From Macrostomum lignano (lineage: Eukaryota), in NCBI GenBank assembly GCA_002269645.1, contig NIVC01000513.1, positions 494,416-558,415 of the forward strand: 64,000 bases of DNA, read 5' to 3'. Shown here in pieces: positions 26,028-62,735 of the stretch. Every line of letters starts with the position of its first letter. Within the stretch, counting starts at the first letter, position 1. Both the position numbers and the translations under genes were made by a program. The notes beneath the pieces are model-generated. The model ran no database searches and was not told where the DNA came from. It saw only the letters and a program-made list of their open reading frames with translations.

Positions 26028-27569
<1,542 letters not shown>

Positions 27570-33888: not shown

Positions 33889-34026
33889 GTAAGTAGTGCT
33901 GCTTCTGGCGTATGGACGGTTAGCTTTGTTGGAGTCTTTCTCTTCTATCTGTCTATCCATATTTCTATAATTCTACACTATTAATTCTAGACTATAATTC
34001 GTCTCCTTCTTTCCTCATAACCGTAG

Positions 34027-37000: not shown

Positions 37001-37119
37001 AGGTCAAGGATCCGAGCGGCGCTCTCATCTCGTTGGAGACCGCCGAGAAGATGGGCATCCTGACTGTGGCCGACGCGGCAGCCGCTGCCACTTTAGCTGG
37101 CGGCGATCCGATGTCGCAG
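34027..37119 (+). CDS. Exon with spectrin-like helices, low-complexity linkers and plectin-repeat clusters (1031 codons)
   Basis: ccgtag|NVQQLL ... PMSQ|gtatgg; motifs such as FTIAEALNRGLID..STIVDPDTG..VPL..AI..GLLNPESG and RVSVFEALERGLID. Confidence 0.9.
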
Positions 37120-37685: not shown

Positions 37686-40076
37686 GCTTCGAACCCGGCT
37701 GCTTCCTCGCAGCAGTCATCCTCCTCGCAGACTTTCGGTGATGGTTTTCCTCAGCCCGATTCTGTCCCCCCTGCCCGCCCCGAGCAGCTCTGTCATATGC
37801 CTGCTTCTTTGCCTGAGGCGATTCAACCAGGAGATACCGATGATGAGCTGCTGCAGCGTCAGGCGCAGCAGGCGCAACAAGATCAGCCGATCAGCTCAGT
37901 ACGGATGGCCCGAGCAGGCGCCGACGCCTTCATGCAGCCAACCGGATCGGCGCCGCAGAACAAGTTTGGCGACAGGCGACTGGGAAACCGGTACGAACAG
38001 CAGGGCGAGGATGTGCCAATGGACGAGGAAGAGCAAATCAACGCTTTGCATGCGCTGGCCGACGAATTGGCAATGAGCAGCAGCCAGGAGGATGTTAGCC
38101 GACCGGCAAATCATCAAAATGATTTCTCGCATCCTGCCAATTCTAGTCACCTTGGCGATCCTGATAAACAAGAGAACTTTGCTAGCCAAGTTCATCGGAC
38201 TCGTGCTGGAGATTTGGTTTATCAAGTGGATCCTTCTCAATCAGGAATGTCTACTCAGCAAGTGGATCCTGCTCAATCAGGAATGTCTACTCAGCAAGTT
38301 GATCCTTCTCAACCAGGAATGTCTACTCAGCAAGTGGATCCTGCTCAATCAGGAATGTCTACTCAGCAAGTGGATCCTTCTCAACCAGGAATGTCTACTC
38401 AGCAAGTGGATCCTTCTCAATCAGGAATGTCTACTCAGCAAGTTGATCCTGCTCAATCAGGAATGTCTACTCAGCAAGTTGATCCTGCTCAACCAGGAAT
38501 GTCTACTCAGCAAGTGGATCCTTCTCAATCAGGAATGTCTACTCAGCAAGTGGATCCTTCTCAATCAGGAATGTCTACTCAGCAAGTGGATCCTGCTCAA
38601 CCAGGAATGTCTACTCAGCAAGTTGATCCTTCTCGATCAGCAGTGCCTACTCAGCAAGTGGATCCTGCTCAACCAGGAATGTCTACTCAGCAAGTTGATC
38701 CTTCTCAACCAGGAATGTCTACTCAGCAAGTGGATCCTGCTCAATCAGGAATGTCTACTCAGCAAGTGGATCCTGCTCAATCAGGAATGTCTACTCAGCA
38801 AGTTGATCCTGCTCAACCAGGAATGTCTACTCAGCAAGTGGATCCTTCTCAATCAGGAATGTCTACTCAGCAAGTTGATCCTGCTCAACCAGGAATGTCT
38901 ACTCAGCAAGTTGATCCTGCTCAATCAGGAATGTCTACTCAGCAAGTGGATCCTTCTCAATCAGGAATGTCTACTCAGCAAGTTGATCCTGCTCAACCAG
39001 GAATGTCTACTCAGCAAGTGGATCCTTCTCAATCAGGAATGTCTACTCAGCAAGTGGATCCTGCTCAACCAGGAATGTCTACTCAGCAAGTTGATCCTTC
39101 TCAACCAGGAATGTCTACTCAGCAAGTGGATCCTGCTCAATCAGGAATGTCTACTCAGCAAGTTGATCCTGCTCAACCAGGAATGTCTACTCAGCAAGTG
39201 GATCCTGCTCAACCAGGAATGTCTACTCAGCAAGTTGATCCTGCTCAACCAGGAATGTCTACTCAGCAAGTTGATCCTTCTCGATCAGCAGTGCCTACTC
39301 AGCAAATGGACCCTACACAGACCGGAGACTTTAATCGCCAAACTTATCCAAGTAGCTCCGGTGACAATGAAAAGGAGGCCGATTTCCACCACGGATACGA
39401 CACCAGCCTGCCCAACCAAGCGGCCGGTCGCCTGCAACCCCAGTGGTCGTCTTCAAAGCGCCCAACGGCGCTGCAACTGGCCATGGAAGGCGCCTACAAT
39501 CCAGAGCTGCTCTGCTGCTACCGGCCAGACACCCTGGAACCCGTCAGCTTGGCTCGAGCGATACGTGAGGATTTTCTCAGCCATCAAGGCACGAAATTGG
39601 CGATAAAGAGCGAAGGCGAACAGGCTCCTACCGAAATTAGTCTGGAACAGGCATTCGAGCTGGGAATTCTTAACCGCAATGAACTCGACGAAGACCGTTT
39701 GACCGAGTGTCTCGCCAACGGTACTCTCCGAGTCCTCAGTGCACCCTATGCCGGCTGCCTCTACTTGCGCCGGCTGGTCCAAGACAACTGGGACCCCGAG
39801 AGACTGCAGTTCAGCGATGGAGACGGTCGAAACGCGACATTTCCTCAAACTGTGGAGTCAGCTATTTTGCACCCGGATCTAGTGCTGGTGCGGGACCTCA
39901 GCGCTGGCGAGTCCGTGTCGCTGGCAACGGCGCTGAATCGCGAACTGGTGAACCCGGTGACTGGAGCGGTGCTCGACACCAACACAGGCTGCTCAGCACC
40001 GCTTGAAGAGGCCGCTAGGATCCGCATCATCTCGGCACCGCACGAGCGGCAGCTGGCGAGATCTATCGACAATCAG
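37686..40076 (+). CDS. Phase-0 exon (797 codons) with 30 copies of a 12-aa repeat plus plectin repeats
   Basis: gtttcag|ASNP ... DNQ|gtaggg; ISLEQAFELGIL, VSLATALNRELVNPVTGAVLDTNTG. Confidence 0.85.
38223..39302 (+). repeat. Coding 36-bp tandem repeat QVDP(S/A)Q(S/P)GMSTQ, 30 copies
   Basis: caagtggatcctgctcaatcaggaatgtctactcag; 1080 bp with no indels. Confidence 0.97.
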
Positions 40077-40786
40077 GTAGGGTGTTGAGTGAATACTGCT
40101 AATTGTTACCATTCACAACAGCGAGAAACCGTTTGAACATAAATCAAATTTTCTATCAAACATCATTTGAATCATTTTAGGGCTACTATTACTACGTAGG
40201 TGTCAGGTTCTTTCCCTTTTTGTCATGTGATTGCTACCAGTACTGAGCATGCTATTTATAAACTGCTCAATTACGTCGTAACTCCACGATCGATTGGAGA
40301 ATTATTTATCTCTTTAGATAATTTCGGCTCATCCACAAATGATTAATTTATACGAAAAAATATAGCCAATATTTGCACCATTCTCTTTAACTTCAAAGTC
40401 AAAATGTATGTTAAATTGCAAAATAATAACTAAATAAAGCACGAATATGTATTTAGCAAGTTCTCACAAAATAGCTCGTAGGAGATGCTTTTGTTATCTA
40501 ATGCATTGCGAATTTATCAGAATGCACCATGACAATGACAAAAGACAAAACAAAACTGTTAAAAGTTACAAGCAGTTCTACAGATACGTAGTTAGAAGCT
40601 TGCATCATATTGGAGTGAACCCTAGCAATAGCCGAGTAAGTAGCAAAATTCAATTTAAAAAGTGTCTCGATCATATCTTAGGAGCTATGTGAGAAAGTAG
40701 AGCTAGGTTGCACACATTTCAAGACTTTTCGGCCATTTCAAGCCAATATTGCCTCAATGATCCATTAAATTGACGAACGAACCCAG

Positions 40787-43700
40787 GTTCCCGATAACAG
40801 CGTCAGCAGCCGCAGCAGCGGCGGCGGTGGCGGCGGCGGCGGCGGCTTTGACTTGAAAGCGCAGCCGTCGCTGCCAACACAGACGGGCCTGTTTCAGACT
40901 GACCCCGTTAAGCCAGACCCGTCCGCTGGGCCCCAGGGCACCCCCAGTGGCCTTCCCAACTGCCTGACTGCCCGCCTGGGCCAGGACGGCGGGGTGACCA
41001 TGTTTAACTTTAGCCGTCGCCCGGAGCCCCTCGGAGGCTCCGACCCGCTGTTGGTTGGCTCAGGGACCTACCGAGCCGGCCTGGGCCCCGACTTTCAGCC
41101 CGTTCTGCTCTTTTTCGACACAGTCAGCGGCGAGCCGCTTTGCTTTGGCGACTGTCTGCAGAGAGGCATCTTTCACCTGGTCGAGTCCACTGTTGTCGAA
41201 GAATCGGGTCGTTCGACTCCACTTGAGACCGCTCTCCGCGAAAAACTCGTCCACTTGCACAACGGGGACTTGCTTAGCGAGGGTCATCAGCATCGGGTGG
41301 CCAGCTTGGAATTTTCCAGCGCTCTCCGATCTGGTCGACTAGTATTGCGGCTGGCTTTGGGTGTGGATTTCGTTACAGTCTTGGACGGTCTGGTAACTCA
41401 GCAAGTTGCTGACTCGCTGGCCGAGGTGATTAAGCTCGAGACGGGGCCGCTCGGTCTGTGGCATTGCTACGCTGGAATTGAAGACTCTGCGTCTGGAGCT
41501 CGACTGTCTCTAAGTCAAGCTGTTCGTCGGGGCCTCATTAGCCAGGAGGAGGCCGAGGCTCTGCTGAAACGTCTGCTACCCAGCTTTCGCGAGCTGGCAG
41601 CGTCCTACGACCCTCGAAGGCGTTGTCTGGTGAACCCGGCAAACGGACGGCCAATCAGTTTGGCAGAGGCGGTTCAACTGGGCTTGATCACCATGGACCA
41701 GCTGCACGAACTGCAACGGTGCAGGTGCACCGAGTCGCAATTCGATTGCGAAGATAATATCGACGAGGAAACCAACTGGCAGGAGACCGCCGATCAATTG
41801 AACGGATTAGCGGACACGCGTAATCCAGCGATTGTTAGCCAAGCAAAGAAACGTGCTCAAACCCCCAGCAGTGAAAGCGGGGAAAATCGGCTTGCAAATC
41901 AACTTCCAAGGTTGCCGGGAAGCAGCGGCGCAACGGCAGCTGCTTCTGAGTTGAGTCAACCTGAGCAAACTATTCCGACGCCTCCCCAGGCCAAGGTAGC
42001 AAAAGTTTCGGCTCCAGAAATTGACAGCGCGCAAGAGATTAAGGGTGCCAAAAGAGACGTGAGTCAGCCAGGCGTCGCGGAGAAGCCTCCACTACAGCAG
42101 CCAGGGCGGGAACTTTTGCACCCAGGCAGTGACTACAGCGGAGACACATTAAGCCAAGCTCAAGTGGACCCGAAGCACAGGCAGAATGAACCTACTCAAT
42201 TGAAACTCGCGCCAGTCAGTCGGACGCCCACTATTGCAAGAGAAGCGGATTACTCATTCGAAGAGAAGCCTACAGGTCAAGGATTGACAGAGCAGCTCTC
42301 AGGAGATTTCCACTACCAGATCCCAAAAGTCCAAACAGAGAAAGAGTCTATCTCTAAAACCCTTGCTGGCAATGAAGTTAATTCCGATACTAATTCCCGT
42401 GAAAGACCTGCTAGTCAACAGTCGAATGATAGGCAACTCACCGCAGTTGATCAGGTACCTGCCTCATTTAGTCCAAAAGAAAAAGTTGAGCAGTTAGTAG
42501 AACCAGCTGCTTTAAGAACGGATAAGCAACCGAAAGCAGATGCTGCCCTCAACGCAACTGCTAAATGTCAGCTGCCTGCATCAGACAGCACTTCTATAGA
42601 TCAACTTTCAGCATCAGAATCTGCATCACCAAAAGGTCAGACGGGTCTTGCTGGCCTGCCAACTACAGACTTCAATGGTACAGAACGGCACCAGCAACCT
42701 TTGACAGGCCTCAGTGAATCAGAAAAATTATCGACTACAGGCCACGCTGGATCAGAACGACAGCCTTTAACAGGCCTCACTGGATATGAGCAACAGCCAA
42801 CTACTGGCCTCGCTGGATCAGTTCAGCAGCAGCAATCTTCGAAAAGCCCCAGTGAATCCGAACAGCTACCGACTACAGGCCTTGCTGGATCAGAGCAACA
42901 GCCAACTACAGGTCTCGCTGAATCAGAACAGCAGCCAACTACAGGCCTTGCTAGAACAAAGCAACAGCCAACTACAGGTCTCGCTGGATCAGAACAGCAG
43001 CCAACTACAGGCCTCGCTGGATTAGAAAAACAACCAACTACAGGCCACGCTGGATCAGAGAAGCAGCCAACTACAGGCCTTACTGAATCTGAGCAACAGC
43101 CAACTACAGGCCTTGCTGGATCAGAACAGCAGCCAACTACAGGCCTCGTTGGATCAGAACAACAGCCGACTAGAAGTCTCACTGGATCTGAGCAACAGCC
43201 ATCTACAGGCCTCGCTCGATCAGAACAGCAGCTAACTACAGGCCTCGCTGGATTAAAACAACAGCAAACTACAGGCCACGCTGGATCAGAAAAACAGCAG
43301 CAGCCAACTACAGGCCACGCTGGAACAGAACAGCAGCAGCAAACTACAGGCCTTGCTGGATCAGAACAACAGCAGCAGCCAACTACAGGCCTTGCTGGAT
43401 CAGAACAACAGCCAACTACAGGCCTCGCTGGATTAGAAAAACAACCAACTACAGGCCACGCTGGATCAGAGAAGCAGCCAACTACAGGCCTTACTGAATC
43501 TGAGCAACAGCCAACTACAGGCCTTGCTGGATCAGAACAGCAGCCAACTACAAGCCTCGTTGGATCAGAACAACAGCCGACTAGAAGTCTCACTGGATCT
43601 GAGCAACAGCCATCTACAGGCCTCGCTGGATCAGAACAGCAGCTAACTACAGGCCTCGCTGGATTAAAACAACAGCAAACTACAGACCTTGCTGGATCAG

Positions 43701-46700
43701 AACAACAGCCAACTACAGGTCTCGCTGGATCAGAACAGCAGCCAACTACAGGCCTCGCTGGATCAGAGCAGCAGCCAACTACAGGCCTTGCTGGATCAGA
43801 ACAACAGCCAACTACAGGCCTTACTGAATCTGAGCAACAGCCAACTACAGACCTTGCTGGATCAGAACAACAGCCAACTACAGGTCTCGCTGGATCAAAA
43901 CAGCAGCCAACTACAGGCCTCGCTGGATCGGAGCAGCAGCCAATTACAGGTCTTGCTGGATCAGAACAGCAGCAGCAGCCAACTACAGGCCTTGCTGGAT
44001 CAGAACAGCAGCCAACTACAGGCCTTACTGAATCTGAGCAACAGCCAACTACAGGCCTTGCTGGATCAGAACAGCAGCCAACTACAGGCCTCGCTGGATT
44101 AAAACAACAGCCAACTACAGACCTTGCTGGATCAGAACAGCAGCCAACTACAGGTCTCGCTGGATCAGAACAGCAGCCAACTACAGGCCTCGCTGGATCA
44201 GAGCAGCAGCCAATTACAGGTCTTGCTGAATCAGAACAGCAGCAGCAGCCAACTACAGGCCTTGCTGGATCAGAACAGCAGCCAACTACAGGCCTTGCTG
44301 GATCAGAACAGCAGCCAACTACAGGCCTTGCTGGATCAGAGCAAAAGCCAACTACAGACCTCGCTGAATTAGAAAAACAGCAGCAGCCAACTGCAGGCCT
44401 CGCTGGATCAGAGCAACAGCCAACTACAGGCCACGCTGGATCAGAAAAACAGCAGCAGCCAACTACAGGCCACGCTGGAACAGAACAGCAGCCAATTACA
44501 GGTCTTACTGGATCAGAACAGCAGCCAACTACAGGCCTTGCTGGATCAGAACAACAGCCATCTACAGGCCTTGCTAGATCAGAACAGCAGCCAACTACAG
44601 GCCTCGCTGGATCAGAACGACAGCCTTCAACAGGCCTTGCTGGATCGGAGCAACGGCAGCAGCCAACTACAGGCCTTGCTGGATCAGAACAACAGCCAAC
44701 TACAGGCTTTTCTGGATCAGAACAGCAGCCAATTACAGGTCTTGCTGGATCAGAACGACAGCCTTCAAAAGGCTTCACTGGATCAGAACAGCAGCCAAGT
44801 ACAGGCCTTGCTGGATCAGAAAAGCAGCCAACTACAGGCCTTGCTGGATCAGAGCAGCAGCCAACTACAAAGCTCGCTGGATCAGAGCAACAGCAACAGC
44901 CAACTACAGGCGTCCCTGGATCGGAACAACAGCCAACTACAGGCCTTGCTGGATCAGAACAGCAGCCAATTACAGGTCTTGCTGGATCAGAACAGCAGCA
45001 GCAGCCAACTACAGGCCTTGCTGGATCGAAACAGCAGCCAACTACAGGCCTTGCTGGATCAGAACAACAGCCAACTACAGGCCTCGCTGGATCAGAACAA
45101 CAGCAGCAGCCAACTACAGGCCTTGCTGGATCAGAACAACAGCCATCTACAGGCCTTGCTAGATCAGAACAGCAGCCAACTACAGGCCTCGCTGGATCAG
45201 AACGACAGCCTTCAACAGGCCTTGCTGGATCGGAGCAACGGCAGCAGCCAACTACAGACCTTGCTGGATCAGAACAACAGCCAACTACAGGCTTTTCTGG
45301 ATCAGAACAGCAGCCAATTACAGGTCTTGCTAAATCAGAACGACAGCCTTCAAAAGGCCTCGCTGGATCAGAGCAACAGCCAACTACAGGCCACGCTGGA
45401 TCAGAAAAACAGCAGCAGCCAACTACAGGCCTTGCTGGCTCAGAACAACAGCCATCCACAGGCTTAGCTGGATCCGAGGAGCAGCCAGCTACAGGCGTCG
45501 CTGGATCAGATCAGCAGCTAACTACAGACCTTGCTGGATCAGAACAGCAGCCAACTACAGGCTTCGCTGGATCAGAACAGCAGCCAACTACAGGCCTTGC
45601 TGGATCAGAACAACAGCCAACTACAGGCCTTGCTGAATCAGAACAACAGCCAACTACAGGTCTTGCTGGATCAGAACAGCAGCAGCAGCAAACTACAGGC
45701 CTTGCTGGATCAGAACAGCAGCCAACTACAGGCCTCGCTGAATCAGAGGAACAGCCATCTACAGGCCTCGCAGGATCAGAGGAACAGCCAGCTACAGGCG
45801 TCGCTGGATCAGAACAGCAGCCAACTACAGGCCTCGCTGGATCAGAACAACAGAAGCAGTCAACTACAGGCCTCGCTGGATCAGAACGACAGCCTTCAAC
45901 AGGCCTCGCTGGATCTGAGCAACGGCAGCAGCCAACTACAGGCCTTGCTGGATCAGAACAGCAGCCAATTACAGGTCTTGCTGGATCAGAACAGCAGCAG
46001 CAGCCAACTACAGGCCTTGCTGGATCAGAACAGCAGCCAACTATAGGCGTCGCTGGATCAGAGGAACAGCAAACTACAGGCGTCGCTGGATCAGATCAGC
46101 AGCCAACTACAGGCCTCGCTGGATCAGAGGAACAGCAAACTACAGGCGTCGCTGGATCAGATCAGCAGCTAACTACAGACCTTGCTGGATCAGAACAACA
46201 GCCAACTACAGGCTTTTCTGGATTAGAACAGCAGCCAACTACAGGCGTCGCTGAATCAAAACAACAGCCAACTACAAGTCTTGCTGGATCAGAACAGCAG
46301 CAGCAGCAAACTACAAGCCTTGCTGGATCAGAGGAACAGCCAGCTACAGGCCTCGCAGGATCAGAGGAACAGCCAGCTACAGGCGTCGCTGGATCAGAAC
46401 AGCAGCCAACTACAGGCCTTGCTAGATCAGAACAGCAGCCAACTTCAGGCCTTGCTGGATCAGAAAAGCAGCCAACTACAGGCCTTGCTGGATCAGAACA
46501 GCAGCAGCAGCCAACTACAGGCCTTGCTGGATCAGAACAGCAGCAGCAGCCAACTACAGACCTTGCTGGATCAGAACAACAGCCAACTACAGGCTTTTCT
46601 GGATCAGAACAGCAGCCAATTACAGGTCTTGCTGGATCAGAACGACAGCCTTCAAAAGGCTTCACTGGATCAGAACAGCAGCCAAGTACAGGCCTTGCTG

Positions 46701-49700
46701 GATCAGAAAAGCAGCCAACTACAGGCCTTGCTGGATCAGAGCAGCAGCCAACTACAAAGCTCGCTGGATCAGAGCAACAGCAACAGCCAACTACAGGCGT
46801 CCCTGGATCGGAACAACAGCCAACTACAGGCCTTGCTGGATCAGAACAGCAGCCAATTACAGGTCTTGCTGGATCAGAACAGCAGCAGCAGCCAACTACA
46901 GGCCTTGCTGGATCGAAACAGCAGCCAACTACAGGGCTTGCTGGATCAGAACAACAGCCAACTACAGGCCTCGCTGGATCAGAACAACAGCAGCAGCCAA
47001 CTACAGGTCTCGCTGGATCAGAACGACAGCCTTCAACAGGCCTGGCTGGATCGGAGCAACGGCAGCAGCCAACTACAGACCTTGCTGGATCAGAACAACA
47101 GCCAACTACAGGCTTTTCTGGATCAGAACAGCAGCCAATTACAGGTCTTGCTAAATCAGAACGACAGCCTTCAAAAGGCTTCACTGGATCTGAGCAACAG
47201 CCAACTACAGGCCTCGCTGGATCAGAGGAACAGCAAAATACTGGCCTCGCTGGATCAGAGCAACAGCCAACTACAGGCCACGCTGGATCACAGCAACAGC
47301 CAACTACAGGCCTCGTTGGATCAGAACAACGGCCAACTAGAAGTCTCACTGGATCTGAGCAACAGCCAACTACCGGCGTCGCTGGATCAGAGCATAAGCC
47401 AACTACAGGTCTTGCTGGATCAGAAAAGCAGCCAACTACAGGCATTGCTGGATCAGAACAGCAGCCAAGTACAGGCCTTGCTGGATCAGAAAAGCAGCCA
47501 ACTACAGGCCTTGCTGGATCAGAACAGCAGCCAACTACAAAGCTCGCTGGATCAGAGCAACAGCAACAGCCAACTACAGGCGTCCCTGGATCGGAACAAC
47601 AGCCAACTACAGGCCTTGCTGGATCAGAACAGCAGCCAATTACAGGTCTTGCTGGATCAGAACAGCAGCAGCAGCAAACTACAGGCCTTGCTGGATCAGA
47701 ACAGCAGCCAATTCCAGGTCTTACTGGATCAGAACAGCAGCAGCAGCCAACTACAGGCCTTGCTGGATCAGAACAACAGCAGCAGCCAACTACAGGCCTC
47801 GCTGGATCAGAGCAACAGCAACAGCCAACTACAGGCGTCCCTGGATCGGAACAACAGCCAACTACAGGCCTTGCTGGATCAGAACAACAGCCAACTACAG
47901 GCCTCGCTGGATCAGAACAACAGCAGCAGCCAACTACAGGTCTCGCTGGATCAGAACGACAGCCTTCAACAGGCCTGGCTGGATCGGAGCAACGGCAGCA
48001 GCCAACTACAGACCTTGCTGGATCAGAACAACAGCCAACTACAGGCTTTTCTGGATCAGAACAGCAGCCAACTACAGGTCTCGCTGGATCAGAACGACAG
48101 CCTTCAACTGGCCTCGCTGGATCTAAGCAACGGCAGCAGCCAACTACAGGCCTTGCTGGATCAGAACAACAGTCAACTACAGGCTTTTCTGGATTAGAAC
48201 AGCAGCCAACTACAGGCGTCGCTGGATCAGAACAGCAGCCAACTACAGGCCTTGCTGGATCAGAACAGCAGCCAACTACAGGCCTTGCTGGATCAGAGCA
48301 AAAGCCAACTACAGACCTCGCTGAATTAGAAAAACAGCAGCAGCCAACTGCAGGACTCGCTGGATCAGAGCAACAGCCAACTACAGGCCACGCTGGATCA
48401 GAAAAACAGCAGCAGCCAACTACAGGCCTTGCTGGCTCAGAACAACAGCCATCCACAGGCTTAGCTGGATCCGAGGAGCAGCCAGCTACAGGCGTCGCTG
48501 GATCAGATCAGCAGCTAACTACAGACCTTGCTGGATCAGAACAGCAGCCAACTACAGGCTTCGCTGGATCAGAACAGCAGCCAACTACAGGCCTTGCTGG
48601 ATCAGAACAACAGCCAACTACAGGCCTTGCTGAATCAGAACAACAGCCAACTACAGGTCTTGCTGGATCAGAACAGCAGCAGCAGCAAACTACAGGCCTT
48701 GCTGGATCAGAACAGCAGCCAACTACAGGCCTCGCTGAATCAGAGGAACAGCCATCTACAGGCCTCGCAGGATCAGAGGAACAGCCAGCTACAGGCGTCG
48801 CTGGATCAGAACAGCAGCCAACTACAGGCCTCGCTGGATCAGAACAACAGAAGCAGTCAACTACAGGCCTCGCTGGATCAGAACGACAGCCTTCAACAGG
48901 CCTCGCTGGATCTGAGCAACGGCAGCAGCCAACTACAGGCCTTGCTGGATCAGAACAGCAGCCAATTACAGGTCTTGCTGGATCAGAACAGCAGCAACAG
49001 CCAACTACAGGCCTCGTTGGATCAGAACAACGGCCAACTAGAAGTCTCACTGGATCTGAGCAACAGCCAACTACCGGCGTCGCTGGATCAGAGCATAAGC
49101 CAACTACAGGTCTTGCTGGATCAGAAAAGCAGCCAACTACAGGCATTGCTGGATCAGAACAGCAGCTAACTACAGACCTTGCTGGATCAGAACAGCAGCC
49201 AACTACAGGCTTCGCTGGATCAGAACAGCAGCCAACTACAGGCCTTGCTGGATCAGAACAACAGCCAACTACAGGCCTTGCTGAATCAGAACAACAGCCA
49301 ACTACAGGTCTTGCTGGATCAGAACAGCAGCAGCAGCAAACTACAGGCCTTGCTGGATCAGAACAGCAGCCAACTACAGGCCTCGCTGAATCAGAGGAAC
49401 AGCCATCTACAGGCCTCGCAGGATCAGAGGAACAGCCAGCTACAGGCGTCGCTGGATCAGAACAGCAGCCAACTACAGGCCTCGCTGGATCAGAACAACA
49501 GAAGCAGTCAACTACAGGCCTCGCTGGATCAGAACGACAGCCTTCAACAGGCCTCGCTGGATCTGAGCAACGGCAGCAGCCAACTACAGGCCTTGCTGGA
49601 TCAGAACAGCAGCCAATTACAGGTCTTGCTGGATCAGAACAGCAGCAACAGCCAACTACAGGCCTCGTTGGATCAGAACAACGGCCAACTAGAAGTCTCA

Positions 49701-52700
49701 CTGGATCTGAGCAACAGCCAACTACCGGCGTCGCTGGATTAGAGCATAAGCCAACTACAGGTCTTGCTGGATCAGAAAAGCAGCCAACTACAGGCATTGC
49801 TGGATCAGAACAGCAGCCAAGTACAGGCCTTGCTGGATCAGAAAAGCAGCCAACTACAGGCCTTGCTGGATCAGAACAGCAGCCAACTACAAAGCTCGCT
49901 GGATCAGAGCAACAGCAACAGCCAACTACAGGCGTCCCTGGATCGGAACAACAGCCAACTACAGGCCTTGCTGGATCAGAACAGCAGCCAACTACAGGCC
50001 TTGCTGGATCAGAACAACAGCAGCAGCCAACTACAGGCCTTGCTGGATCAGAACAACAGCCATCTACAGGCCTTGCTAGATCAGAACAGCAGCCAACTAC
50101 AGGCCTCGCTGGATCAGAACGACAGCCTTCAACAGGCCTTGCTGGATCGGAGCAACGGCAGCAGCCAACTACAGACCTTGCTGGATCAGAACAACAGCCA
50201 ACTACAGGCTTTTCTGGATCAGAACAGCAGCCAATTACAGGTCTTGCTGGATCAGAACGACAGCCTTCAAAAGGCTTCACTGGATCAGAACAGCAGCCAA
50301 GTACAGGCCTTGCTGGATCAGAAAAGCAGCCAACTACAGGCCTTGCTGGATCAGAGCAGCAGCCAACTACAAAGCTCGCTGGATCAGAGCAACAGCAACA
50401 GCCAACTACAGGCGTCCCTGGATCGGAACAACAGCCAACTACAGGCCTTGCTGGATCAGAACAGCAGCCAATTACAGGTCTTGCTGGATCAGAACAGCAG
50501 CAGCAGCCAACTACAGGCCTTGCTGGATCGAAACAGCAGCCAACTACAGGGCTTGCTGGATCAGAACAACAGCCAACTACAGGCCTCGCTGGATCAGAAC
50601 AACAGCAGCAGCCAACTACAGGTCTCGCTGGATCAGAACGACAGCCTTCAACAGGCCTGGCTGGATCGGAGCAACGGCAGCAGCCAACTACAGACCTTGC
50701 TGGATCAGAACAACAGCCAACTACAGGCTTTTCTGGATCAGAACAGCAGCCAATTACAGGTCTTGCTAAATCAGAACGACAGCCTTCAAAAGGCTTCACT
50801 GGATCTGAGCAACAGCCAACTACAGGCCTCGCTGGATCAGAGGAACAGCAAAATACTGGCCTCGCTGGATCAGAGCAACAGCCAACTACAGGCCACGCTG
50901 GATCACAGCAACAGCCAACTACAGGCCTCGTTGGATCAGAACAACGGCCAACTAGAAGTCTCACTGGATCTGAGCAACAGCCAACTACCGGCGTCGCTGG
51001 ATCAGAGCATAAGCCAACTACAGGTCTTGCTGGATCAGAAAAGCAGCCAACTACAGGCATTGCTGGATCAGAACAGCAGCCAAGTACAGGCCTTGCTGGA
51101 TCAGAAAAGCAGCCAACTACAGGCCTTGCTGGATCAGAACAGCAGCCAACTACAAAGCTCGCTGGATCAGAGCAACAGCAACAGCCAACTACAGGCGTCC
51201 CTGGATCGGAACAACAGCCAACTACAGGCCTTGCTGGATCAGAACAGCAGCCAATTACAGGTCTTGCTGGATCAGAACAGCAGCAGCAGCAAACTACAGG
51301 CCTTGCTGGATCAGAACAGCAGCCAATTCCAGGTCTTACTGGATCAGAACAGCAGCAGCAGCCAACTACAGGCCTTGCTGGATCAGAACAACAGCAGCAG
51401 CCAACTACAGGCCTCGCTGGATCAGAACAACAGCAGCAGCCAACTACAGGCCTTGCTGGATCGAAACAGCAGCCAACTACAGGCCTTGCTGGATCAGAAC
51501 AACAGCCAACTACAGGCCTCGCTGGATCAGAACAACAGCAGCAGCCAACTACAGGTCTCGCTGGATCAGAACGACAGCCTTCAACAGGCCTGGCTGGATC
51601 GGAGCAACGGCAGCAGCCAACTACAGACCTTGCTGGATCAGAACAACAGCCAACTACAGGCTTTTCTGGATCAGAACAGCAGCCAACTACAGGTCTCGCT
51701 GGATCAGAACGACAGCCTTCAACTGGCCTCGCTGGATCTGAGCAACGGCAGCAGCCAACTACAGGCCTTGCTGGATCAGAACAACAGTCAACTACAGGCT
51801 TTTCTGGATTAGAACAGCAGCCAACTACAGGCGTCGCTGGATCAGAACAGCAGCCAACTACAGGCCTTGCTGGATCAGAACAGCAGCCAACTACAGGCCT
51901 TGCTGGATCAGAGCAAAAGCCAACTACAGACCTCGCTGAATTAGAAAAACAGCAGCAGCCAACTGCAGGACTCGCTGGATCAGAGCAACAGCCAACTACA
52001 GGCCACGCTGGATCAGAAAAACAGCAGCAGCCAACTACAGGCCTTGCTGGCTCAGAACAACAGCCATCCACAGGCTTAGCTGGATCCGAGGAGCAGCCAG
52101 CTACAGGCGTCGCTGGATCAGATCAGCAGCTAACTACAGACCTTGCTGGATCAGAACAGCAGCCAACTACAGGCTTCGCTGGATCAGAACAGCAGCCAAC
52201 TACAGGCCTTGCTGGATCAGAACAACAGCCAACTACAGGCCTTGCTGAATCAGAACAACAGCCAACTACAGGTCTTGCTGGATCAGAACAGCAGCAGCAG
52301 CAAACTACAGGCCTTGCTGGATCAGAACAGCAGCCAACTACAGGCCTCGCTGAATCAGAGGAACAGCCATCTACAGGCCTCGCAGGATCAGAGGAACAGC
52401 CAGCTACAGGCGTCGCTGGATCAGAACAGCAGCCAACTACAGGCCTCGCTGGATCAGAACAACAGAAGCAGTCAACTACAGGCCTCGCTGGATCAGAACG
52501 ACAGCCTTCAACAGGCCTCGCTGGATCTGAGCAACGGCAGCAGCCAACTACAGGCCTTGCTGGATCAGAACAGCAGCCAATTACAGGTCTTGCTGGATCA
52601 GAACAGCAGCAGCAGCCAACTACAGGCCTTGCTGGATCAGAACAGCAGCCAACTATAGGCGTCGCTGGATCAGAGGAACAGCAAACTACAGGCGTCGCTG

Positions 52701-54157
52701 GATCAGATCAGCAGCCAACTACAGGCCTCGCTGGATCAGAGGAACAGCAAACTACAGGCGTCGCTGGATCAGATCAGCAGCTAACTACAGACCTTGCTGG
52801 ATCAGAACAACAGCCAACTACAGGCTTTTCTGGATTAGAACAGCAGCCAACTACAGGCGTCGCTGAATCAAAACAACAGCCAACTACAAGTCTTGCTGGA
52901 TCAGAACAGCAGCAGCAGCAAACTACAAGCCTTGCTGGATCAGAGGAACAGCCAGCTACAGGCCTCGCAGGATCAGAGGAACAGCCAGCTACAGGCGTCG
53001 CTGGATCAGAACAGCAGCCAACTACAGGCCTTGCTAGATCAGAACAGCAGCCAACTTCAGGCCTTGCTGGATCAGAAAAGCAGCCAACTACAGGCCTTGC
53101 TGGATCAGAACAGCAGCAGCAGCCAACTACAGGCCTTGCTGGATCAGAACAGCAGCAGCAGCCAACTACAGGCCTTGCTGGATCAGAACAACAGCAGCAG
53201 CCAACTACAGGCCTTGCTGGATCAGAACAGCAGCCAATTACAGGTCTTGCTGGATCAGAACAGCAGCAGCAGCCAACTACAGGCCTTGCTGGATCAGAAC
53301 AGCAGCCAACTAAAGGCGTCGCTGGATCAGAGGAACAGCAAGCAACAGGCGTCGCTGGATCAGATCAGCAGCTAACTATAGACCTTGCTGGATCAGAACA
53401 GCAGCTAACTACAGGCGTCGCAGGATCAGAACAGCAGCCAACTGCAGGCCTTGCTGGATCAGAAAAACAGCAGCAGCCAACTACAGGCCTCGCTGGATCA
53501 GAACAGCAGCACCAACCTTTAATAGGCCTACCTGGATCAGCATCGATGTCAACTATAGATCCTTCTGGATCAGTGAAGCAGCCAAGTCTTTCTAAATCAA
53601 AGCATGAAGAACCAACCGTCATCTCAGTTTCTGATCATCTCCTACAAACTGGTTCTGGCCAATTGGAATTGCAGCCGTCTGATTTGGAGCTGCAGCCATC
53701 AGTGCATTCAGTTGGAGCTGAGCCAGCAATATTGAGCGGTGATTCGGATGTTCAACAGAGAAACGATCAAAGCGTCGCGGATCCAAAGCTTTCATCGACA
53801 GCCGTACACGATCCGGTGGAACAACCTGCCTTCCCTACGCGATCTGTGGAATCTCATCAGCTGGTCGAGGAACAAGCAATCCCATGCTTTAGCGGTATCG
53901 ATAAAGAGAAACCTGCAGATAGTGCTGGTGAGCCTTTCTTAAAGCATGCCAACGATTTTTCATCGGACAAGGACACATCGGGTCAAGCAGCAGATTCAAC
54001 AGAACAGACTGTTGCAGAACTGAATGGCCCGGACTTGGCTGAGGGGGTATCCAGTGGTAAACCAGCGGCGGGAAGCATCCCAGAGCTGTCTCTGGGTGCC
54101 GCGGGTCAGTCTGAACTCGCCGTCAAAGACGCGCTGCAAGTGAGCAGTCCAAATCAG
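40787..54157 (+). CDS. Giant phase-0 exon (13,371 nt, 4457 codons): plectin repeats, then a giant low-complexity repeat
   Basis: cccag|GTT CCC (purine-rich acceptor, weaker) ... AAT CAG|gttggt; uninterrupted ORF; plectin-like SGARLSLSQAVRRGLI and LVNPANGRPISLAEAVQLGLI. Confidence 0.85.
42731..53515 (+). repeat. Coding 33/39-bp tandem repeat PTTGLAGSEQQ(QQ), roughly 300-320 units, with higher-order duplications
   Basis: Unit ccaactacaggccttgctggatcagaacagcag; copy number is estimated from length, not counted. Confidence 0.97.
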
Positions 54158-54668
54158 GTTGGTAAAATAGTCTTTTTTGAAAAAAAAGTTGCGCAAGAGT
54201 GTCGCTGATTTTCGCTTGGCTTACGTAGTGGACATAACTTAGGAAACAAAATTGGACCTAATATTTGAAATTTAACAGCCACTTGATTGATTAAAGTTTT
54301 TGATTGCGATTTTTACTATAAATCAGCTACCAGATCTCGTGATCACCTCAGTCACACATCCGATTATCGAGTGGACCGCACGGAGTGTGAATAATAACGA
54401 AGCTTTGATCGCTGTAGCTAAAGAACGCTTGGCCAGCAAATTATTTTTGTCATTTTTTTTCTAAAACCAATGCGCGAACATACGCTAAATTTCTGGCCAT
54501 AGCGAAAATACGTCTTAGGGATTGCATTGCAGCTGCTGATCAGTATTTTCTAATGCTTCTTTTACAGTTTTACCTTGCAATATTACTTGCGCAACTATTT
54601 TTGTTTTGTTGCTTTCTCAAACATAACAAATCTAACACTTTTCCTTTTTTGTTCGGCCACCCATGCAG

Positions 54669-57600
54669 ACCTCGAGCTTCCAAACCCCTAACCAAAGCTC
54701 TAACCAACATGCTCAGCCCCAGAATGCTGGTAGTCATTTAGTCTCTGGCTTGCAGACTAAGCCTAACTCGCTCGGTCAGTCGGCTTCTCCATCAGGCCTG
54801 TCGAGCGCGGACGTGGATTTTGAGAAGCAGCAAGGCTTAGAAGAAGCTGTGGATAAGGCTTTTGATGCCATTCAGTCAGGTCGTGAACGCGTCTCTATCG
54901 AGCGCAGTCTGCCCAAGAAACATGACGACGACCCAGATTTCAATTCTCAGCAGTCCGAAGCTGATGACCACGAAATCGTGGACATCTCAGTAAGTTCAGA
55001 CGCTTCGAGCGTCTGCTTTGAGGACGTCATTCACGGTCAGCAGATTGAGCTAGACGTTTCCATGCTGGTAGAGTTAGAAGATGAAGTGGTTGAGGCTTGC
55101 ACCTCTGGTGCGTCGTATGCTGAGCCAGTGCAGGCGAACAGACACGTGGTTCAGGAGGTGCCAGTGCAGCTGGCAGCGGCTGTCAGCTATCCTGTGCTGT
55201 CTAAAGCAAAGATTTCAGACCATGTTGTTCTTGAGGGCGCTGGTGTGACTAATGCCGAGCTTGGAGACAGATCAAGCCGTCCGGAGTCAGCAGACATCGA
55301 TAGCTCGAAATTTATTCTGAACTCAAAAACTGCTGAACATGAAGTGTCGCCATCTACGACTACGATAAAAGAGCAGCCTTGCGATACAAGCGACTCGCTG
55401 GATCAACTAACGGATCAAGAAATGGGCAGCATTCTGCCTGGAGAGTCTCTGTTCCTTCCCTCCGAAGCTGTCAGCTCACTGCCGGTTGGTAAACGCAAGC
55501 TGCCTGACAGTCTGGAGTTCGAGCCTGATAAAGGCGTTAGCGACACGGAGTATCGTTTGAAACGACCTTTTTCCGAAACAGAGATGTTAGCCAACACGGA
55601 GAGGCGCGAATCTGTTCTTAAACAAGAGCAGCAAACTCGAAAGTCGATTCCAGCTGCTGAGAGTTTGAGTGAAAATAAAGACTCAATTAAGCTTGTGAGC
55701 GCATTGAAAGATGAGAACGAGAGCACCACGGAAACACAGCCAAGCAGAATAACCAAATCCCAAAGCTCGAATGACACTGAGAAACCTACCATAAAAGCTG
55801 TTAAAGGTGTCGAGAAAATTGTACACTCCGAGTTTCAAGTTCTCGCTGTGCAGCTTCGTACGGAGTCTGCAAGCCTGAAAGATCAGCCTTATGAATCTGA
55901 TGACAACTTGGTGCCCACCACCAGGACCGGCAAGCTAGAGCGCTATGAAGACCAATCGGTCAGTTCCAACGCTTCGGAAGAAATCCTTCATAACCAAGCT
56001 GAACCCGCCGAGAAGTATCTCGATGTCGAGCCTTCTCTACACCCGGACTCCACAAAGCCTCACGAATCCGCAGACAGAGATGATTTGATGAAGAATAAGC
56101 CTGACAGGCCGAATTTTGCGGCCAATGATGGCGAGAATGCCCAAACAGCCGACTCAGAAAATTTATTAGATAATGCGCCCCGCCCATCAGCCAGCGAAGA
56201 AGAGCTGGTATCTTTTCTCGAAGAAATCCAGCAAAAAGTCAGAATGGACAACAAGAAAGAGATTAGAGAGGTGAGCGAAACTCCAATCGCTGATGATGAT
56301 GAATCTGCATCCGAATCGTCAATTGGTGCCAAATCTGAGAGAGACGCATTTGAACAGCGCAAGGACAAATTGGACGATGAGCTAAAATCAGGTGACGGTG
56401 GAAAGACCCTCGACTTTTGGGGTGACGAGGGCAAGGCCGAGAGGGTGAACGTTCAGGCATCATCACCGGCTGGATTGCAGGAGTTTCCTTCAAAGCTTAA
56501 TTCTCAGGACACAGATGAAAGTAACCAATTTGGCAAGGATTCAAAGGAATACCGCACACCTTCAGATGCTGCAGAAACTGATCGAGGCGCGAAATCATTT
56601 AGGAATGATCTGCCTGAAAATTTTCAGACTGTTGTTGATACGGAGACGGCCGTTCTTGCAGTACAGCTGCAGGCTGGTGAACCAATGCGCGAATATGACG
56701 ACGAGCAAATGTCAGTTTCTGATTCTGAAGAAGTCGAAGAGTTCATTTCAGTGGTAATTAAAAATCCAGCCGAACACTTCAAGCGCATGGCTTGGGAGGC
56801 ACAGACCACAGCCGATGACGTTCTTTGTTCAGGGGCAGAGCAATCTTCTCACTCTGATTGTATTCGCCAGCTCAGTGAGCAGGAAGACTCTGAACCAATT
56901 AGAAACCGGAATGAGGATGTCGATAAGCGCAAAGAAACTACAGAGAATGCCTTGGAGAGTGACATCAATGAGCCGACTGGTTTTGCTGCAGATTCTGGTG
57001 TCACTCAGTCAGCCGACGTCAAAGATGTTGAGCCGGACTCACAAAAGTTCAGTGGAAAGACTGACCAAATTTTACAGTCTAATCGACACCAGGATGAAGA
57101 GTCGGAAATCGCAGACGCTGCAGAGAAGCTGGGCGGTGACGCTGAACAGGAAGAGGAACTTGATCAAAACCGTCAACCATTCCAGGAATCTGGAAAAGTA
57201 CAGGAAAGTGAGCGAGCTGCTGAGAGTGCGATGGACGACGGCTCATCTATTCACAGTTCATCTAAAGATTCATCACTAATTGGCCCGCCTCATATCACCA
57301 GTGTTTCAGACACCCAGCAAGACGTGCATAAATCAACGCTAGATAATCACGAGCATCAGCCAATCGAAATGCGAACAACGGCCTCACAGTTTTATGCTAC
57401 TTTCCCGGATGATAAGGAAATTAGAAGCAAAGCAGAAGACAGAGCGCCTCTTCAGCGTGTTGCGGAGACGGAAACCTATGTCCTAGCTGTGCGACTGTGC
57501 AGGAATGATGAAAATCTTCTGTCTGGCTTTCCTGACCAGGCTTCTACCGAGCCAAATGAAACTGTGCCAGTTCCAGAGTCCCTTCGGCGCAATGATCTTT

Positions 57601-62649: not shown

Positions 62650-62735
62650 GTATATTAGTTTGATTTTTAAGTTTTTCTTGAAACTGTCCTCCTAACAATG
62701 GTCTGACCAGTCTTCTCAATTCGTCCAAATTTCAG

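What the first reader, a model, noticed from the sequence alone, without database searches (positions are those of the whole stretch)
42731..53515. About 3,600-residue PTTGLAGSEQQ polymer inside a spectraplakin: candidate elastomeric spring or spacer
About 10.8 kb of 33/39-bp units stay open in one frame only. The shifted plus frame and the antisense frame are broken by stops, and every length change is a multiple of 3 (mostly CAG gain or loss). The frame is continuous with upstream plectin repeats and a downstream donor. The sequence is Thr/Gly/Ser/Gln/Pro-rich, lacks aromatics, and has about one Glu per unit, so it should be a highly extended acidic disordered chain. I know of no spectraplakin with such an insert. 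It could act as a titin-PEVK-like entropic spring, or as a phospho/O-GlcNAc-tunable spacer, in a highly deformable animal.
Basis: partly seen in the sequence, partly recalled or inferred. Interest (0 to 1): 0.85.

Follow-up and report, generated by a model that had tools for sequence, protein, structure and literature searches.

The report
Giant disordered repeat in flatworm cytolinker
A 10.8-kb run of about 314 copies of an 11- or 13-residue unit (PTTGLAGSEQQ) is kept open for translation inside a giant exon of the Macrostomum lignano spectraplakin gene, most likely as a floppy unstructured spacer; it is an unusual lineage-specific insert whose expression and mechanical role remain untested.

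Summary
A 33/39-bp tandem array (42731-53515, about 314 units) has no stop in one frame. The other frames carry 9 to 311 stops. The array lies in a 4,451-codon exon (40787-54139) with canonical phase-0 splice sites, together with Pfam plectin repeats.

The gene is the Macrostomum lignano spectraplakin (MACF1/dystonin/Shot type). The exon is one of four giant in-frame cassette-type exons, 8,569 codons in all, that form the internal plakin-repeat region.

Selection signals indicate translation:
- Stop-creating variants are missing only in the sense frame.
- Variation by codon position follows 3>1>2.
- pN/pS is about 0.5.
- One peptide is encoded by nine synonymous DNA versions.

The peptide has no Pfam family or true homologue. 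AlphaFold2 gives pLDDT about 34.

I read it as a lineage-specific coding minisatellite that encodes a polar, weakly acidic, disordered spacer or tether. The contour length is about 1.3 µm and the relaxed coil about 35-45 nm.

- Charge density is low, and the composition is not PEVK-like.
- 47% of the array is a ≥99.7% identical internal duplicate, so its length is either very young or inflated by assembly.
- Transcription could not be tested.
- The rod exon downstream carries two unexplained 1-nt frame switches.

The parts
28326..30514 (+). Exons for the calponin-homology 2 domain (28326-28514, and 29021 onward) and the start of the plakin domain. They identify the gene and the organism.
   Evidence: 100% tblastn match of the first 63 residues of P0001 at 28326-28514. 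P0001 (Macrostomum lignano CH-domain protein) is identical except for a frameshifted patch. Best PDB match is MACF1 CH2 plus plakin domain, E 1.6e-19. Pfam Spectrin.
31922..33981 (+). Further plakin-domain exons with spectrin-like repeats. Exon limits were not refined.
   Evidence: Pfam Spectrin E 8.4e-8 in 31922-32719; open stretches listed.
34027..37119 (+). Giant exon A of the plakin-repeat region: 1,031 codons, phase 0-0, plectin repeats separated by low-complexity stretches.
   Evidence: Pfam Plectin E 9.3e-17 and 5.4e-14. AG acceptor, GTATGG donor, no stop.
37686..40076 (+). Giant exon B: 797 codons, phase 0-0. It holds a second coding tandem array at 38223-39314 (36 bp x 30, QVDPAQSGMSTQ) and plakin-like repeats at its end.
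   Evidence: TRF; translation; splice sites; weak Plectin hit.
40077..40786 (+). Intron (710 nt, AT-rich) between exons B and C, GT...AG, phase 0.
   Evidence: Read directly from the sequence; junction gives ...SIDNQ|VPDNS... in frame.
40787..54139 (+). Giant exon C: 13,353 nt, 4,451 codons, no stop, phase 0-0. An alternative in-phase donor lies at 54157|GTTGGT.
41093..41737 (+). Plakin (plectin) repeat modules in the unique N-terminal part of exon C, in the same reading frame as the array.
   Evidence: Pfam Plectin E 1.4e-9 at residues 233-264 of 40769-42730. Matches of 39-47% identity (85-88 aligned residues) to the M. lignano paralogue fragment P0022.
42731..53515 (+). The array: about 314 units of 33 or 39 bp encoding (P)TTGLAGSEQQ(QQ)P, 3,595 codons. 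Both edges are degenerate and the interior is built from multi-kb near-identical blocks.
46543..48996 (+). Largest internal duplicate: 2,454 nt, 99.67% identical to 50158-52611. Also 45359-46559 = 51971-53171 at 100%.
   Evidence: Ungapped self-comparison.
53516..54139 (+). Unique C-terminal part of exon C: Ser/Pro/Glu-rich, no domain found.
   Evidence: Translation; no Pfam family; no homologue.
54140..54668 (+). Intron between exons C and D: GTGAGC...polypyrimidine tract...CAG, phase 0.
54669..61538 (+). Giant exon D: 2,290 codons, phase 0-0. Acidic and Ser-rich, with eight copies of an 'ETxVLAVxLR' motif and plakin-like repeats near the end.
   Evidence: no Pfam family.
62506..64000 (+). 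Downstream exons (62506-62649, 62736 to about 62990, about 63060 onward) with weak spectrin-repeat similarity, presumably the start of the rod. The last one changes frame twice.
   Evidence: Pfam Spectrin 24.2 and 22.7 bits, below the 29.9 cut-off. No PDB match. Frames and sequence.

Best explanation
The array is a lineage-specific coding minisatellite. It arose from a local seed and expanded by slippage or unequal crossing-over inside one of four giant, in-frame (phase 0-0) exons. Those exons make up the internal plakin-repeat region of the Macrostomum lignano spectraplakin.

It is translated, at least in isoforms that include this exon. The product is a roughly 3,600-residue polar, weakly acidic, Pro/Gly-punctuated chain with no stable fold. 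It lies between small islands of plakin repeats.

It most likely acts through length and flexibility rather than through a specific sequence. It would be a long compliant spacer or tether, about 35-45 nm as a relaxed coil and up to about 1.3 µm when pulled out. It would add reach and slack between the actin-binding N-terminal end with its plakin-repeat sites and the rest of the molecule.

Shown here: the array, its reading frame, the exon structure, the selection against stops and against amino-acid change, the lack of predicted structure, and the recent internal duplications.

Inferred only: inclusion in mRNA, the spacer or tether role, and any load bearing.
For: Frame and gene structure:
- 0 stops in 3,595 sense codons, against 30, 59, 311, 9 and 302 in the other frames.
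- Of the single-base variant types that would create a stop, 20 of 21 possible ones are present in the five other frames. Only 1 of 6 is present in the sense frame, and there a second change in the same codon rescues it (Fisher p = 4e-4).
- All units are 33 or 39 nt, so no frame-breaking indel occurs in 10.8 kb.
- The array shares an exon and frame with Pfam plectin repeats.
- Exons A-D all have AG/GT sites in phase 0 and join in frame.

Constraint on the peptide:
- Non-consensus bases by codon position are 214/133/415.
- pN/pS among units is 0.45-0.52 in the sense frame, against 0.83-1.35 in the shifted + frames.
- The commonest peptide, TTGLAGSEQQP, is encoded by 9 DNA versions that differ only synonymously.

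Disorder:
- Mean hydropathy is 0.386, below the Uversky boundary of 0.438.
- AlphaFold2 mean pLDDT is 35.5 for a single sequence and 34.1 with an 11-row alignment, with no secondary structure.
- Mixed 11- and 13-residue units argue against a regular fold.

Mode of origin:
- The array edges are degenerate.
- There is a 4-unit higher order and multi-kb blocks at 99.7-100% identity.
- The same gene has a second coding array and about ten intronic minisatellites.
- 15% of this genome is simple or tandem repeat (PMC5730564).

Context in the family: all spectraplakins splice in an internal plakin-repeat region of poorly known function, encoded in Shot by one exon of about 3,000 residues (bioRxiv 10.1101/122010).
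Against: - There is no transcript or peptide evidence. Public M. lignano proteins do not contain this exon. This is explicable, because the deposited annotation dropped transcripts that overlap repeat annotations.
- All four giant exons are symmetric, so the exon could be skipped in most or all isoforms.
- pN/pS near 0.5, with copies that are not independent, is also what a tolerated disordered passenger would show.
- Half of the array is near-identical duplication, so its length has had little time to be tested by selection, or it is partly an assembly product.
- The rod exon downstream shows two 1-nt frame switches in this sequence. If they are real, this gene copy may be damaged.
- Low charge (FCR 0.13) and 19% Gln could favour a compact or sticky chain rather than an open coil.
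Confidence: 0.6

Rival explanations
1. Tolerated passenger. The array is translated but has no function of its own. It is a by-product of the very high minisatellite activity of this genome that landed in a disordered linker. Selection only keeps it open, soluble and non-toxic so that the downstream part of the protein is made.
For: The window holds about ten intronic minisatellites and a second coding one. 15% of the genome is simple or tandem repeat. 47% of the array is a very recent duplicate. No homologue of the unit exists anywhere. The paralogue fragment P0022 has plakin modules and the VLAVQL motif but no such array. pN/pS of only about 0.5.
Against: The unit peptide is conserved through synonymous change, with 9 DNA versions of one peptide and a 3>1>2 codon-position pattern. 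That is more than 'no stops' requires. 3,600 extra residues per molecule is a large cost to carry for nothing. Near-identical repeats in ANC-1 proved functionally required (PMC8139857).
Confidence: 0.25
2. Load-bearing entropic spring in the strict titin-PEVK sense. The chain lies in series between two anchored ends and sets the passive elasticity of epidermal or muscle-attachment cells in a body without skeleton or cuticle.
For: The chain is disordered and lies in series with cytoskeleton-binding modules. Contour length is about 1.3 µm against a coil of about 35-45 nm, which gives a very large working range. Pro and two Gly per unit disfavour stable structure.
Against: The composition is unlike PEVK: P+E+V+K is 20% and FCR 0.13, against the 'high charge density' of PEVK (PMC7691732 and PMC9100103 abstracts). 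Nothing shows that both ends are anchored under tension. No expression site is known. The length is evolutionarily unstable.
Confidence: 0.15
3. Not expressed as protein. Either the exon (or the array within it) is always removed from mRNA, or this gene copy is a decaying duplicate whose open frame is a relic.
For: There is no transcript evidence. Symmetric exons can be skipped without penalty. There are two frame switches in the rod exon. The sequenced DV1 line carries large duplicated chromosome segments.
Against: The lack of stop-creating variants is specific to the sense frame, and a coding-type substitution pattern accumulated while units diverged by 9-20%. 25.7 kb of exons A-D have no stop or frameshift.
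Confidence: 0.08
4. The length is overstated by assembly. The array is real and coding, but roughly half as long. Near-identical blocks were laid down twice by the assembler. This rival is not exclusive of the others.
For: Blocks of 2,454, 1,201, 658, 641 and 602 nt recur at 99.7-100% identity, covering 5,071 of 10,785 nt. The genome is known to be hard to assemble because of repeats.
Against: The 2.45-kb copies differ at 8-9 positions (about 99.65% identical). Seven of these are clustered in one unit, as expected for true paralogous copies. The mosaic order of blocks looks like unequal exchange. ANC-1 shows that almost identical large coding repeats can be real.
Confidence: 0.2
5. Modification, cross-linking or condensate scaffold. 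The Ser/Thr- and Gln-rich units would serve as multivalent sites for phosphorylation or O-GlcNAc, as transglutaminase substrates (involucrin-like), or as a low-complexity domain that drives phase separation.
For: 26% Ser+Thr and 19% Gln, with about 314 near-identical sites. By recall, plakins envoplakin and periplakin are cross-linked with the Gln-rich repeat protein involucrin; this was not tested here.
Against: No kinase, OGT or transglutaminase consensus was tested or is evident. Aromatic and Arg 'stickers' are nearly absent (F+Y+W 0.6%, R 1.4%). This is speculation.
Confidence: 0.07

Closest known systems
Internal plakin-repeat region (PRR) of spectraplakins: Drosophila Shot-PH, mammalian MACF1b, dystonin-b
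   Same: It occupies the same place in the protein, after the CH and plakin domains and before the rod. It is encoded by giant exon(s), contains plectin repeats, is spliced in as an optional block, and its function is poorly understood.
   Different: Shot has about 40 plectin repeats in about 3,000 residues and MACF1 has about 20. Here 8,569 codons hold only a few plectin-repeat islands detectable by Pfam. 42% of the region is one 11/13-residue polymer, and there is a second 12-residue array. No such polymer is reported in the spectraplakin papers consulted here (one review read; searches).
Titin PEVK segment (entropic spring)
   Same: It is a long, repeat-built, intrinsically disordered segment in series with folded modules of a giant cytoskeletal protein. 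Its length varies by adding or removing repeat units.
   Different: PEVK is defined by high Pro/Glu/Val/Lys content and high charge density, with 28-residue PPAK and poly-E motifs (PMC7691732, PMC9100103). This array has P+E+V+K of 20%, FCR 0.13 and 11/13-residue units, and sits in one exon rather than many small ones. It shows no homology.
Lineage-specific tandem repeats in giant nesprins: Drosophila Msp300-PE and C. elegans ANC-1
   Same: These are giant spectrin-superfamily linkers in which a large part of an isoform consists of taxon-restricted tandem repeats. Those of Msp300-PE are acidic, and those of ANC-1 are almost identical at the nucleotide level and functionally required.
   Different: Their units are 101-108 or 903 residues and are predicted to fold (helical). 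Here the unit is 11/13 residues, of low complexity, and without predicted structure.
Involucrin-type coding minisatellites (Gln/Glu-rich 10-residue repeats that expand within one exon). Cited from general knowledge, not checked here.
   Same: It is a short Gln/Glu-rich unit that expands by tandem duplication inside a single coding exon, with older degenerate and younger homogeneous zones. Involucrin is associated with plakin-family partners.
   Different: Involucrin is a small stand-alone envelope precursor that is cross-linked by transglutaminase. Here the array is embedded in a cytolinker and no cross-linking evidence exists.
Convergent 'QQPT...' 11-12-residue arrays in unrelated giant proteins (P0005, 6,957 aa, unnamed ENA record; fish P0007, P0016)
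   Same: They have similar unit length and a QQPT(T/A) core, and P0005 has well over a hundred copies.
   Different: Other hits come from plants, insects and mammals. The similarity is compositional, not homology.

Membership tests
Spectraplakin (host gene) | N-terminal calponin-homology actin-binding domain | tested here: met
   The CH2 domain is present. The best PDB match is MACF1 (E 1.6e-19). The sequence is identical to M. lignano 'CH domain-containing protein' P0001. CH1 was not looked for.
Spectraplakin (host gene) | Plakin domain made of spectrin-like repeats after the CH domains | tested here: met
   Pfam Spectrin, Spectrin_3 and Spectrin_4 hits in 28964-30622 and 31922-32719. PDB matches to plectin and MACF1 plakin-domain fragments.
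Spectraplakin (host gene) | Plakin (plectin) repeats | tested here: met
   PF00681 hits at E 9.3e-17, 5.4e-14 and 1.4e-9, all above the 20.5-bit cut-off, in exons A and C.
Spectraplakin (host gene) | Long spectrin-repeat rod after the plakin repeats | tested here: inconclusive
   Exons from 62506 onward give Spectrin hits of 24.2 and 22.7 bits, below the 29.9 cut-off, and no PDB match. The sequence looks spectrin-like by eye but changes frame twice.
Spectraplakin (host gene) | C-terminal EF-hands and Gas2-related microtubule-binding domain | not testable with these tools
   This part lies beyond the end of the window. Without it, a plectin-like plakin cannot be formally excluded.
Internal plakin-repeat region (Shot-PH / MACF1b type) | Located between plakin domain and rod, and encoded by giant exon(s) | tested here: met
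   Exons A-D (34027-61538) lie between the plakin-domain exons and the putative rod exons. Shot is compared.
Internal plakin-repeat region (Shot-PH / MACF1b type) | Made mostly of tandem 38-residue plectin repeats (about 20-40) | tested here: not met
   Pfam finds only a few plectin repeats. The array, exon D and most of exon B match no family.
Internal plakin-repeat region (Shot-PH / MACF1b type) | Included by alternative splicing | not testable with these tools
   No RNA data were available. All four exons are phase 0-0 and multiples of 3, which allows skipping without a frame change.
Titin PEVK-type entropic spring | Composition dominated by Pro, Glu, Val and Lys with high charge density | tested here: not met
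   P 8.0%, E 9.3%, V 1.1%, K 1.8%, together 20%. FCR 0.13 and NCPR -0.07. The PEVK definition is taken from the PMC7691732 abstract.
Titin PEVK-type entropic spring | PPAK (28-residue) and poly-E motifs | tested here: not met
   Units are 11 or 13 residues, TTGLAGSEQQ(QQ)P. Motif definitions come from the PMC9100103 abstract.
Titin PEVK-type entropic spring | Intrinsic disorder | tested here: met
   AlphaFold2 pLDDT 35.5 and 34.1, with no confident structure. The chain falls below the Uversky boundary. These are predictions only.
Titin PEVK-type entropic spring | Bears load in series and shows worm-like-chain extensibility | not testable with these tools
   This needs localisation and single-molecule mechanics.
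Mucin-type PTS domain | Pro/Thr/Ser-rich tandem repeats in a secreted or membrane protein | tested here: not met
   P+T+S is 34%. However, the array is in frame inside a cytoplasmic cytolinker, between plectin repeats.
Non-coding (intronic) minisatellite | No preference for an open frame or for synonymous change | tested here: not met
   Stop avoidance is specific to the sense frame. The codon-position pattern is 3>1>2 and pN/pS is about 0.5.

The most novel reading that the evidence does not exclude
A spectraplakin has acquired a micrometre-scale (about 1.3 µm contour) entropic spring of its own kind, unrelated in sequence and composition to PEVK. The number of units changes quickly by unequal exchange. 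Cell or tissue compliance in a skeleton-less animal could then be tuned by minisatellite dynamics within a cytolinker gene.
Probability: 0.15. Interest if true: 0.75.

Novelty: new variant of a known kind. Interest (0 to 1): 0.45.

Why it matters
The function of the internal plakin-repeat region of spectraplakins is poorly understood in any animal. Here the region has grown to about 8,600 codons, and 42% of it is one short-unit disordered polymer.

If the exon is expressed, it offers three things:
- A natural experiment on what this region tolerates or needs: length and flexibility rather than folded plakin repeats.
- An example of how a repeat-rich genome feeds new protein material into giant cytoskeletal genes.
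- A candidate long-range elastic tether in an experimentally tractable flatworm, for which transgenesis is reported (PMC5730564).

There is also a practical point. The deposited annotation removed transcripts overlapping repeats. Exons of this kind are therefore missing from public proteomes and from homology searches.

Tried and rejected
Searches that gave nothing or nothing useful:
- Protein searches with the N flank and with repeat plus C flank found nothing. The search with the whole array timed out.
- The exhaustive phmmer search gave 201 hits to the repeat part. They come from an annelid, fish, a cephalopod, a snail, insects, plants and a marsupial, and carry other short Q/P/T/S repeats. 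I rejected them as compositional matches.
- Only P0022, a M. lignano paralogue fragment, truly matches the plakin flank.
- The look-up of encoding contigs for P0001 and P0002 returned 'not on record', so no second genomic copy could be read.
- Literature searches for Macrostomum or flatworms together with spectraplakin, plectin, MACF1 or dystonin found nothing relevant.
- A metagenome scan for the unit gave 0 hits.
- A PDB search of the putative rod gave 0 hits.
- Pfam on the array and on exon D gave no family.
- A megablast self-comparison returned only the self hit. I replaced it with my own ungapped scan.

Readings considered and rejected:
- Antisense coding. That frame has 9 stops, no flanking exons and the same wobble positions, which explains its equal pN/pS.
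- A regular beta-solenoid, or an 11-mer amphipathic helix of the apolipoprotein or LEA type. Each unit has Pro and two Gly, 11- and 13-residue units are mixed, and pLDDT is 34.
- A secreted mucin. The array is in frame within a cytolinker.
- A tiny intron at the rod frame switches. The open stretches overlap by only 45-50 nt.

Full report
**1. The observation**

Tandem Repeats Finder reports a single array at 42734-53510 with period 33, 313.9 copies and 79% matches. It also shows a 138-bp (four-unit) higher order. Aligning the array to its consensus ACTACAGGCCTTGCTGGATCAGAACAGCAGCCA gives 242 units of 33 nt and 68 of 39 nt. The only irregular units are at the degenerate 5' edge. The extra 6 nt is always two codons placed just before the final CAG-CAG-CCA (CAG-CAG, CAA-CAG, CAA-CGG, AAA-CAG and similar).

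The sense frame has no stop in 3,595 codons. The other two + frames have 30 and 59 stops, and the antisense frames have 311, 9 and 302. The open stretch extends from 40769 to 54205, 4,479 codons.

The translation is (P)TTGLAGSEQQ(QQ)P with variants. Composition is Q 19%, G 16%, T 15%, S 10%, E 9%, P 8%, A 8%, L 7.5%, with 22 aromatic residues in all. All close copies of the unit in the window lie in this array, and none is expected by chance.

**2. Is it coding?**

Several independent signals say yes.

- *Stop-creating variants.* I listed every single-base change from the consensus that would create a stop. In the five non-sense frames, 20 of 21 possible types are actually present among the units. 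In the sense frame only 1 of 6 is present, and there a second change in the same codon removes the stop (Fisher p = 4e-4).
- *Codon position.* Non-consensus bases fall 214/133/415 on codon positions 1/2/3 over all units, and 80/52/156 over distinct units.
- *pN/pS.* Pooled pN/pS among units is 0.45-0.52 in the sense frame. It is 0.83-1.35 in the shifted + frames and in one antisense frame, and 0.66-0.67 in another antisense frame. The remaining antisense frame, which shares the wobble position, gives the same ratio as the sense frame, as it must. That frame has 9 stops and no flanking exons.
- *Synonymous versions.* The commonest peptide, TTGLAGSEQQP (59 copies), is encoded by nine DNA versions that differ only synonymously.
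- *Shared exon.* The array shares its frame and exon with a Pfam plectin repeat (E 1.4e-9).

The copies are not independent because of block duplication. The ratios are therefore descriptive, but the direction is consistent.

**3. Gene and organism**

The exon at 28964-30622 best matches the MACF1 CH2 and plakin-domain structure (E 1.6e-19). It is identical, apart from a frameshifted patch in the public model, to a Macrostomum lignano 'CH domain-containing protein'. The preceding 63 residues of that protein match 28326-28514 at 100%. The window is therefore M. lignano, a free-living flatworm.

Pfam finds spectrin-type repeats in the plakin-domain exons and plectin repeats in 34027-37191 and 40769-42730.

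Reading the splice sites directly gives four consecutive giant exons:

| Exon | Coordinates | Codons |
|---|---|---|
| A | 34027-37119 | 1,031 |
| B | 37686-40076 | 797 |
| C | 40787-54139 | 4,451 |
| D | 54669-61538 | 2,290 |

Each has an AG acceptor and a GT donor. Each is a multiple of three, free of stops, and joined to its neighbours in phase 0. Together they hold 8,569 codons between the plakin domain and exons with weak spectrin-repeat similarity.

This is the position of the internal plakin-repeat region that all spectraplakins can splice in. In Drosophila Shot it is one exon of about 3,000 residues with about 40 plectin repeats (bioRxiv 10.1101/122010). The EF-hand and Gas2-related end that completes the definition of a spectraplakin lies outside the window.

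**4. What is unusual**

In this gene the plakin-repeat region has only a few islands of recognisable plectin repeats. They are separated by very long low-complexity stretches. Two of these stretches are tandem arrays: the one under study, which makes up 42% of the region, and a 36-bp x 30 array encoding QVDPAQSGMSTQ in exon B. Exon D is acidic and Ser-rich and carries eight copies of a short 'ETxVLAVxLR' motif.

The array peptide matches no Pfam family. It has no hit in the 5.8-billion-protein search. The exhaustive search gave only compositional hits from unrelated organisms, including plants. The one true relative of the flank is P0022, a M. lignano paralogue fragment that matches the flank at 39-47% identity over 85-88 residues. 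It has plakin modules and the VLAVQL motif but no such array.

The absence of this exon from public proteomes is explained by the genome paper. Transcripts overlapping repeat annotations were removed before deposition, and 15% of the genome is simple or tandem repeat (PMC5730564).

**5. History of the array**

Both edges are degenerate. The interior is a mosaic of blocks that recur at 99.7-100% identity: 2,454 nt (46543-48996 = 50158-52611), 1,201 nt (45359-46559 = 51971-53171), then 658, 641, 602 nt and others. Together they cover 5,071 of 10,785 nt.

The two 2.45-kb copies differ at 8-9 positions (about 99.65% identical), seven of them within one unit. This is the signature of recent unequal exchange.

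The same pattern makes the assembled length uncertain. It could not be checked here. C. elegans ANC-1, with six 903-residue repeats almost identical at the nucleotide level and functionally required, shows that such structure can be real (PMC8139857).

**6. Physical nature**

- Mean hydropathy is 0.386, below the Uversky boundary of 0.438.
- The fraction of charged residues is 0.13 and net charge per residue is -0.07.
- AlphaFold2 gives mean pLDDT 35.5 for 330 residues alone and 34.1 with an alignment of eleven array segments. No confident secondary structure appears.
- Mixed 11- and 13-residue units, one Pro and two Gly per unit argue against a regular fold.
- Contour length is about 1.3 µm, and a random-coil end-to-end distance is about 35-45 nm. 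Using a worm-like chain with a persistence length near 0.5 nm, I infer that half extension would need roughly 10 pN.

The chain is weakly charged and polar. 'Highly extended acidic' overstates it, and 19% Gln could favour compaction.

**7. Explanation and rivals**

I commit to a translated, lineage-specific coding minisatellite that provides a long disordered spacer or tether within the plakin-repeat region (confidence 0.6). The main rival is a tolerated passenger without a function of its own (0.25).

A strict PEVK-like load-bearing spring is possible but unsupported beyond polymer physics (0.15). The PEVK membership features of composition, charge density and motifs were tested and not met. 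Non-expression or a decaying gene copy is unlikely given the selection signals (0.08). Assembly inflation of the length is a separate, non-exclusive risk (0.2).

**8. A caveat outside the finding**

The rod-coding exon after about 63060 changes genomic frame twice within about 360 nt. The first switch is at a TTT near 63472 and the second at a CC near 63820. The open stretches overlap by only 45-50 nt, so no intron fits.

These are either two homopolymer-length assembly errors or real damage to this copy. In contrast, the 25.7 kb of exons A-D have none.

**9. Comparison, novelty and score**

The closest known things are the internal plakin-repeat regions of Shot, MACF1b and dystonin-b (same place and gene logic, different content). 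Next is titin PEVK (same physics at most). Then come the taxon-restricted tandem repeats of the giant nesprins Msp300-PE and ANC-1 (same evolutionary theme, folded units of 100 or 903 residues).

I found no report of a short-unit disordered polymer in a spectraplakin. I rate it a new variant of a known kind. Interest is moderate (0.45). It is a striking, well-supported coding feature in a tractable animal, but expression and function are untested, and its length is young or uncertain.

Noticed in passing
window 38223-39314 (+), in exon B (37686-40076): A second coding tandem array: 36 bp x 30 copies at 92% matches, encoding QVDPAQSGMSTQ. It is in frame with the exon. It is open in two + frames, with 13-58 stops in the other frames.
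   Followed up: partly
window 54669-61538 (+), exon D: A 2,290-codon exon with no Pfam family. It is acidic (D+E 476 against K+R 216) and Ser-rich. Eight copies of a short conserved motif '(T/S)ETxVLAVxLR' are spaced about 130-310 residues apart, and plakin-like repeats lie near the end. The same motif (YSETLVLAVQLKP) occurs in the M. lignano paralogue fragment P0022. It may be a short linear binding motif.
   Followed up: partly
window about 63472 and about 63815-63832 (+): The spectrin-like reading of the rod exon switches genomic frame twice, +1 then -1, at short homopolymers (TTT and CC). This produces in-frame stops at 63478-80 and 63832-34. The cause is either assembly errors or a damaged gene copy.
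   Followed up: partly
window 1262-27569 and 31102-31964 (introns and upstream): The non-coding sequence is unusually dense in minisatellites. Examples are 24-bp arrays at 1262-2782, an 18-bp GA-rich array at 3168-5440, 31/59-bp arrays at 9387-12107, 31-bp at 19433-20177, 23-bp at 20811-21458 and 24347-25186, 15-bp at 22585-23196, (CT)n of about 775 copies at 26028-27569, and 66- and 23-bp arrays at 31102-31964.
   Followed up: no
P0001 and P0002 against window 28326-30514: The public M. lignano protein models for this gene are fragments that stop at an exon end. They contain frameshifted patches relative to the window. P0001 also differs by two substitutions, which suggests a second near-identical copy or allele.
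   Followed up: partly
P0005 (6,957 aa, ENA, unnamed), residues about 3240-5130 and about 5200-5640: An unrelated giant protein. By eye it carries well over a hundred copies of a 12-residue 'QQPT(T/A)ADVM(S/P)GV' unit and a second array of roughly 20-residue units. Fish proteins P0007 and P0016 carry similar QQPT-core 11-12-mers. This looks like recurrent, convergent invention of this kind of repeat.
   Followed up: partly
window 40818-40846 (+): A (GCG)n run encodes a poly-Gly tract (GGGGGGGGG) 11 codons after the start of exon C.
   Followed up: no
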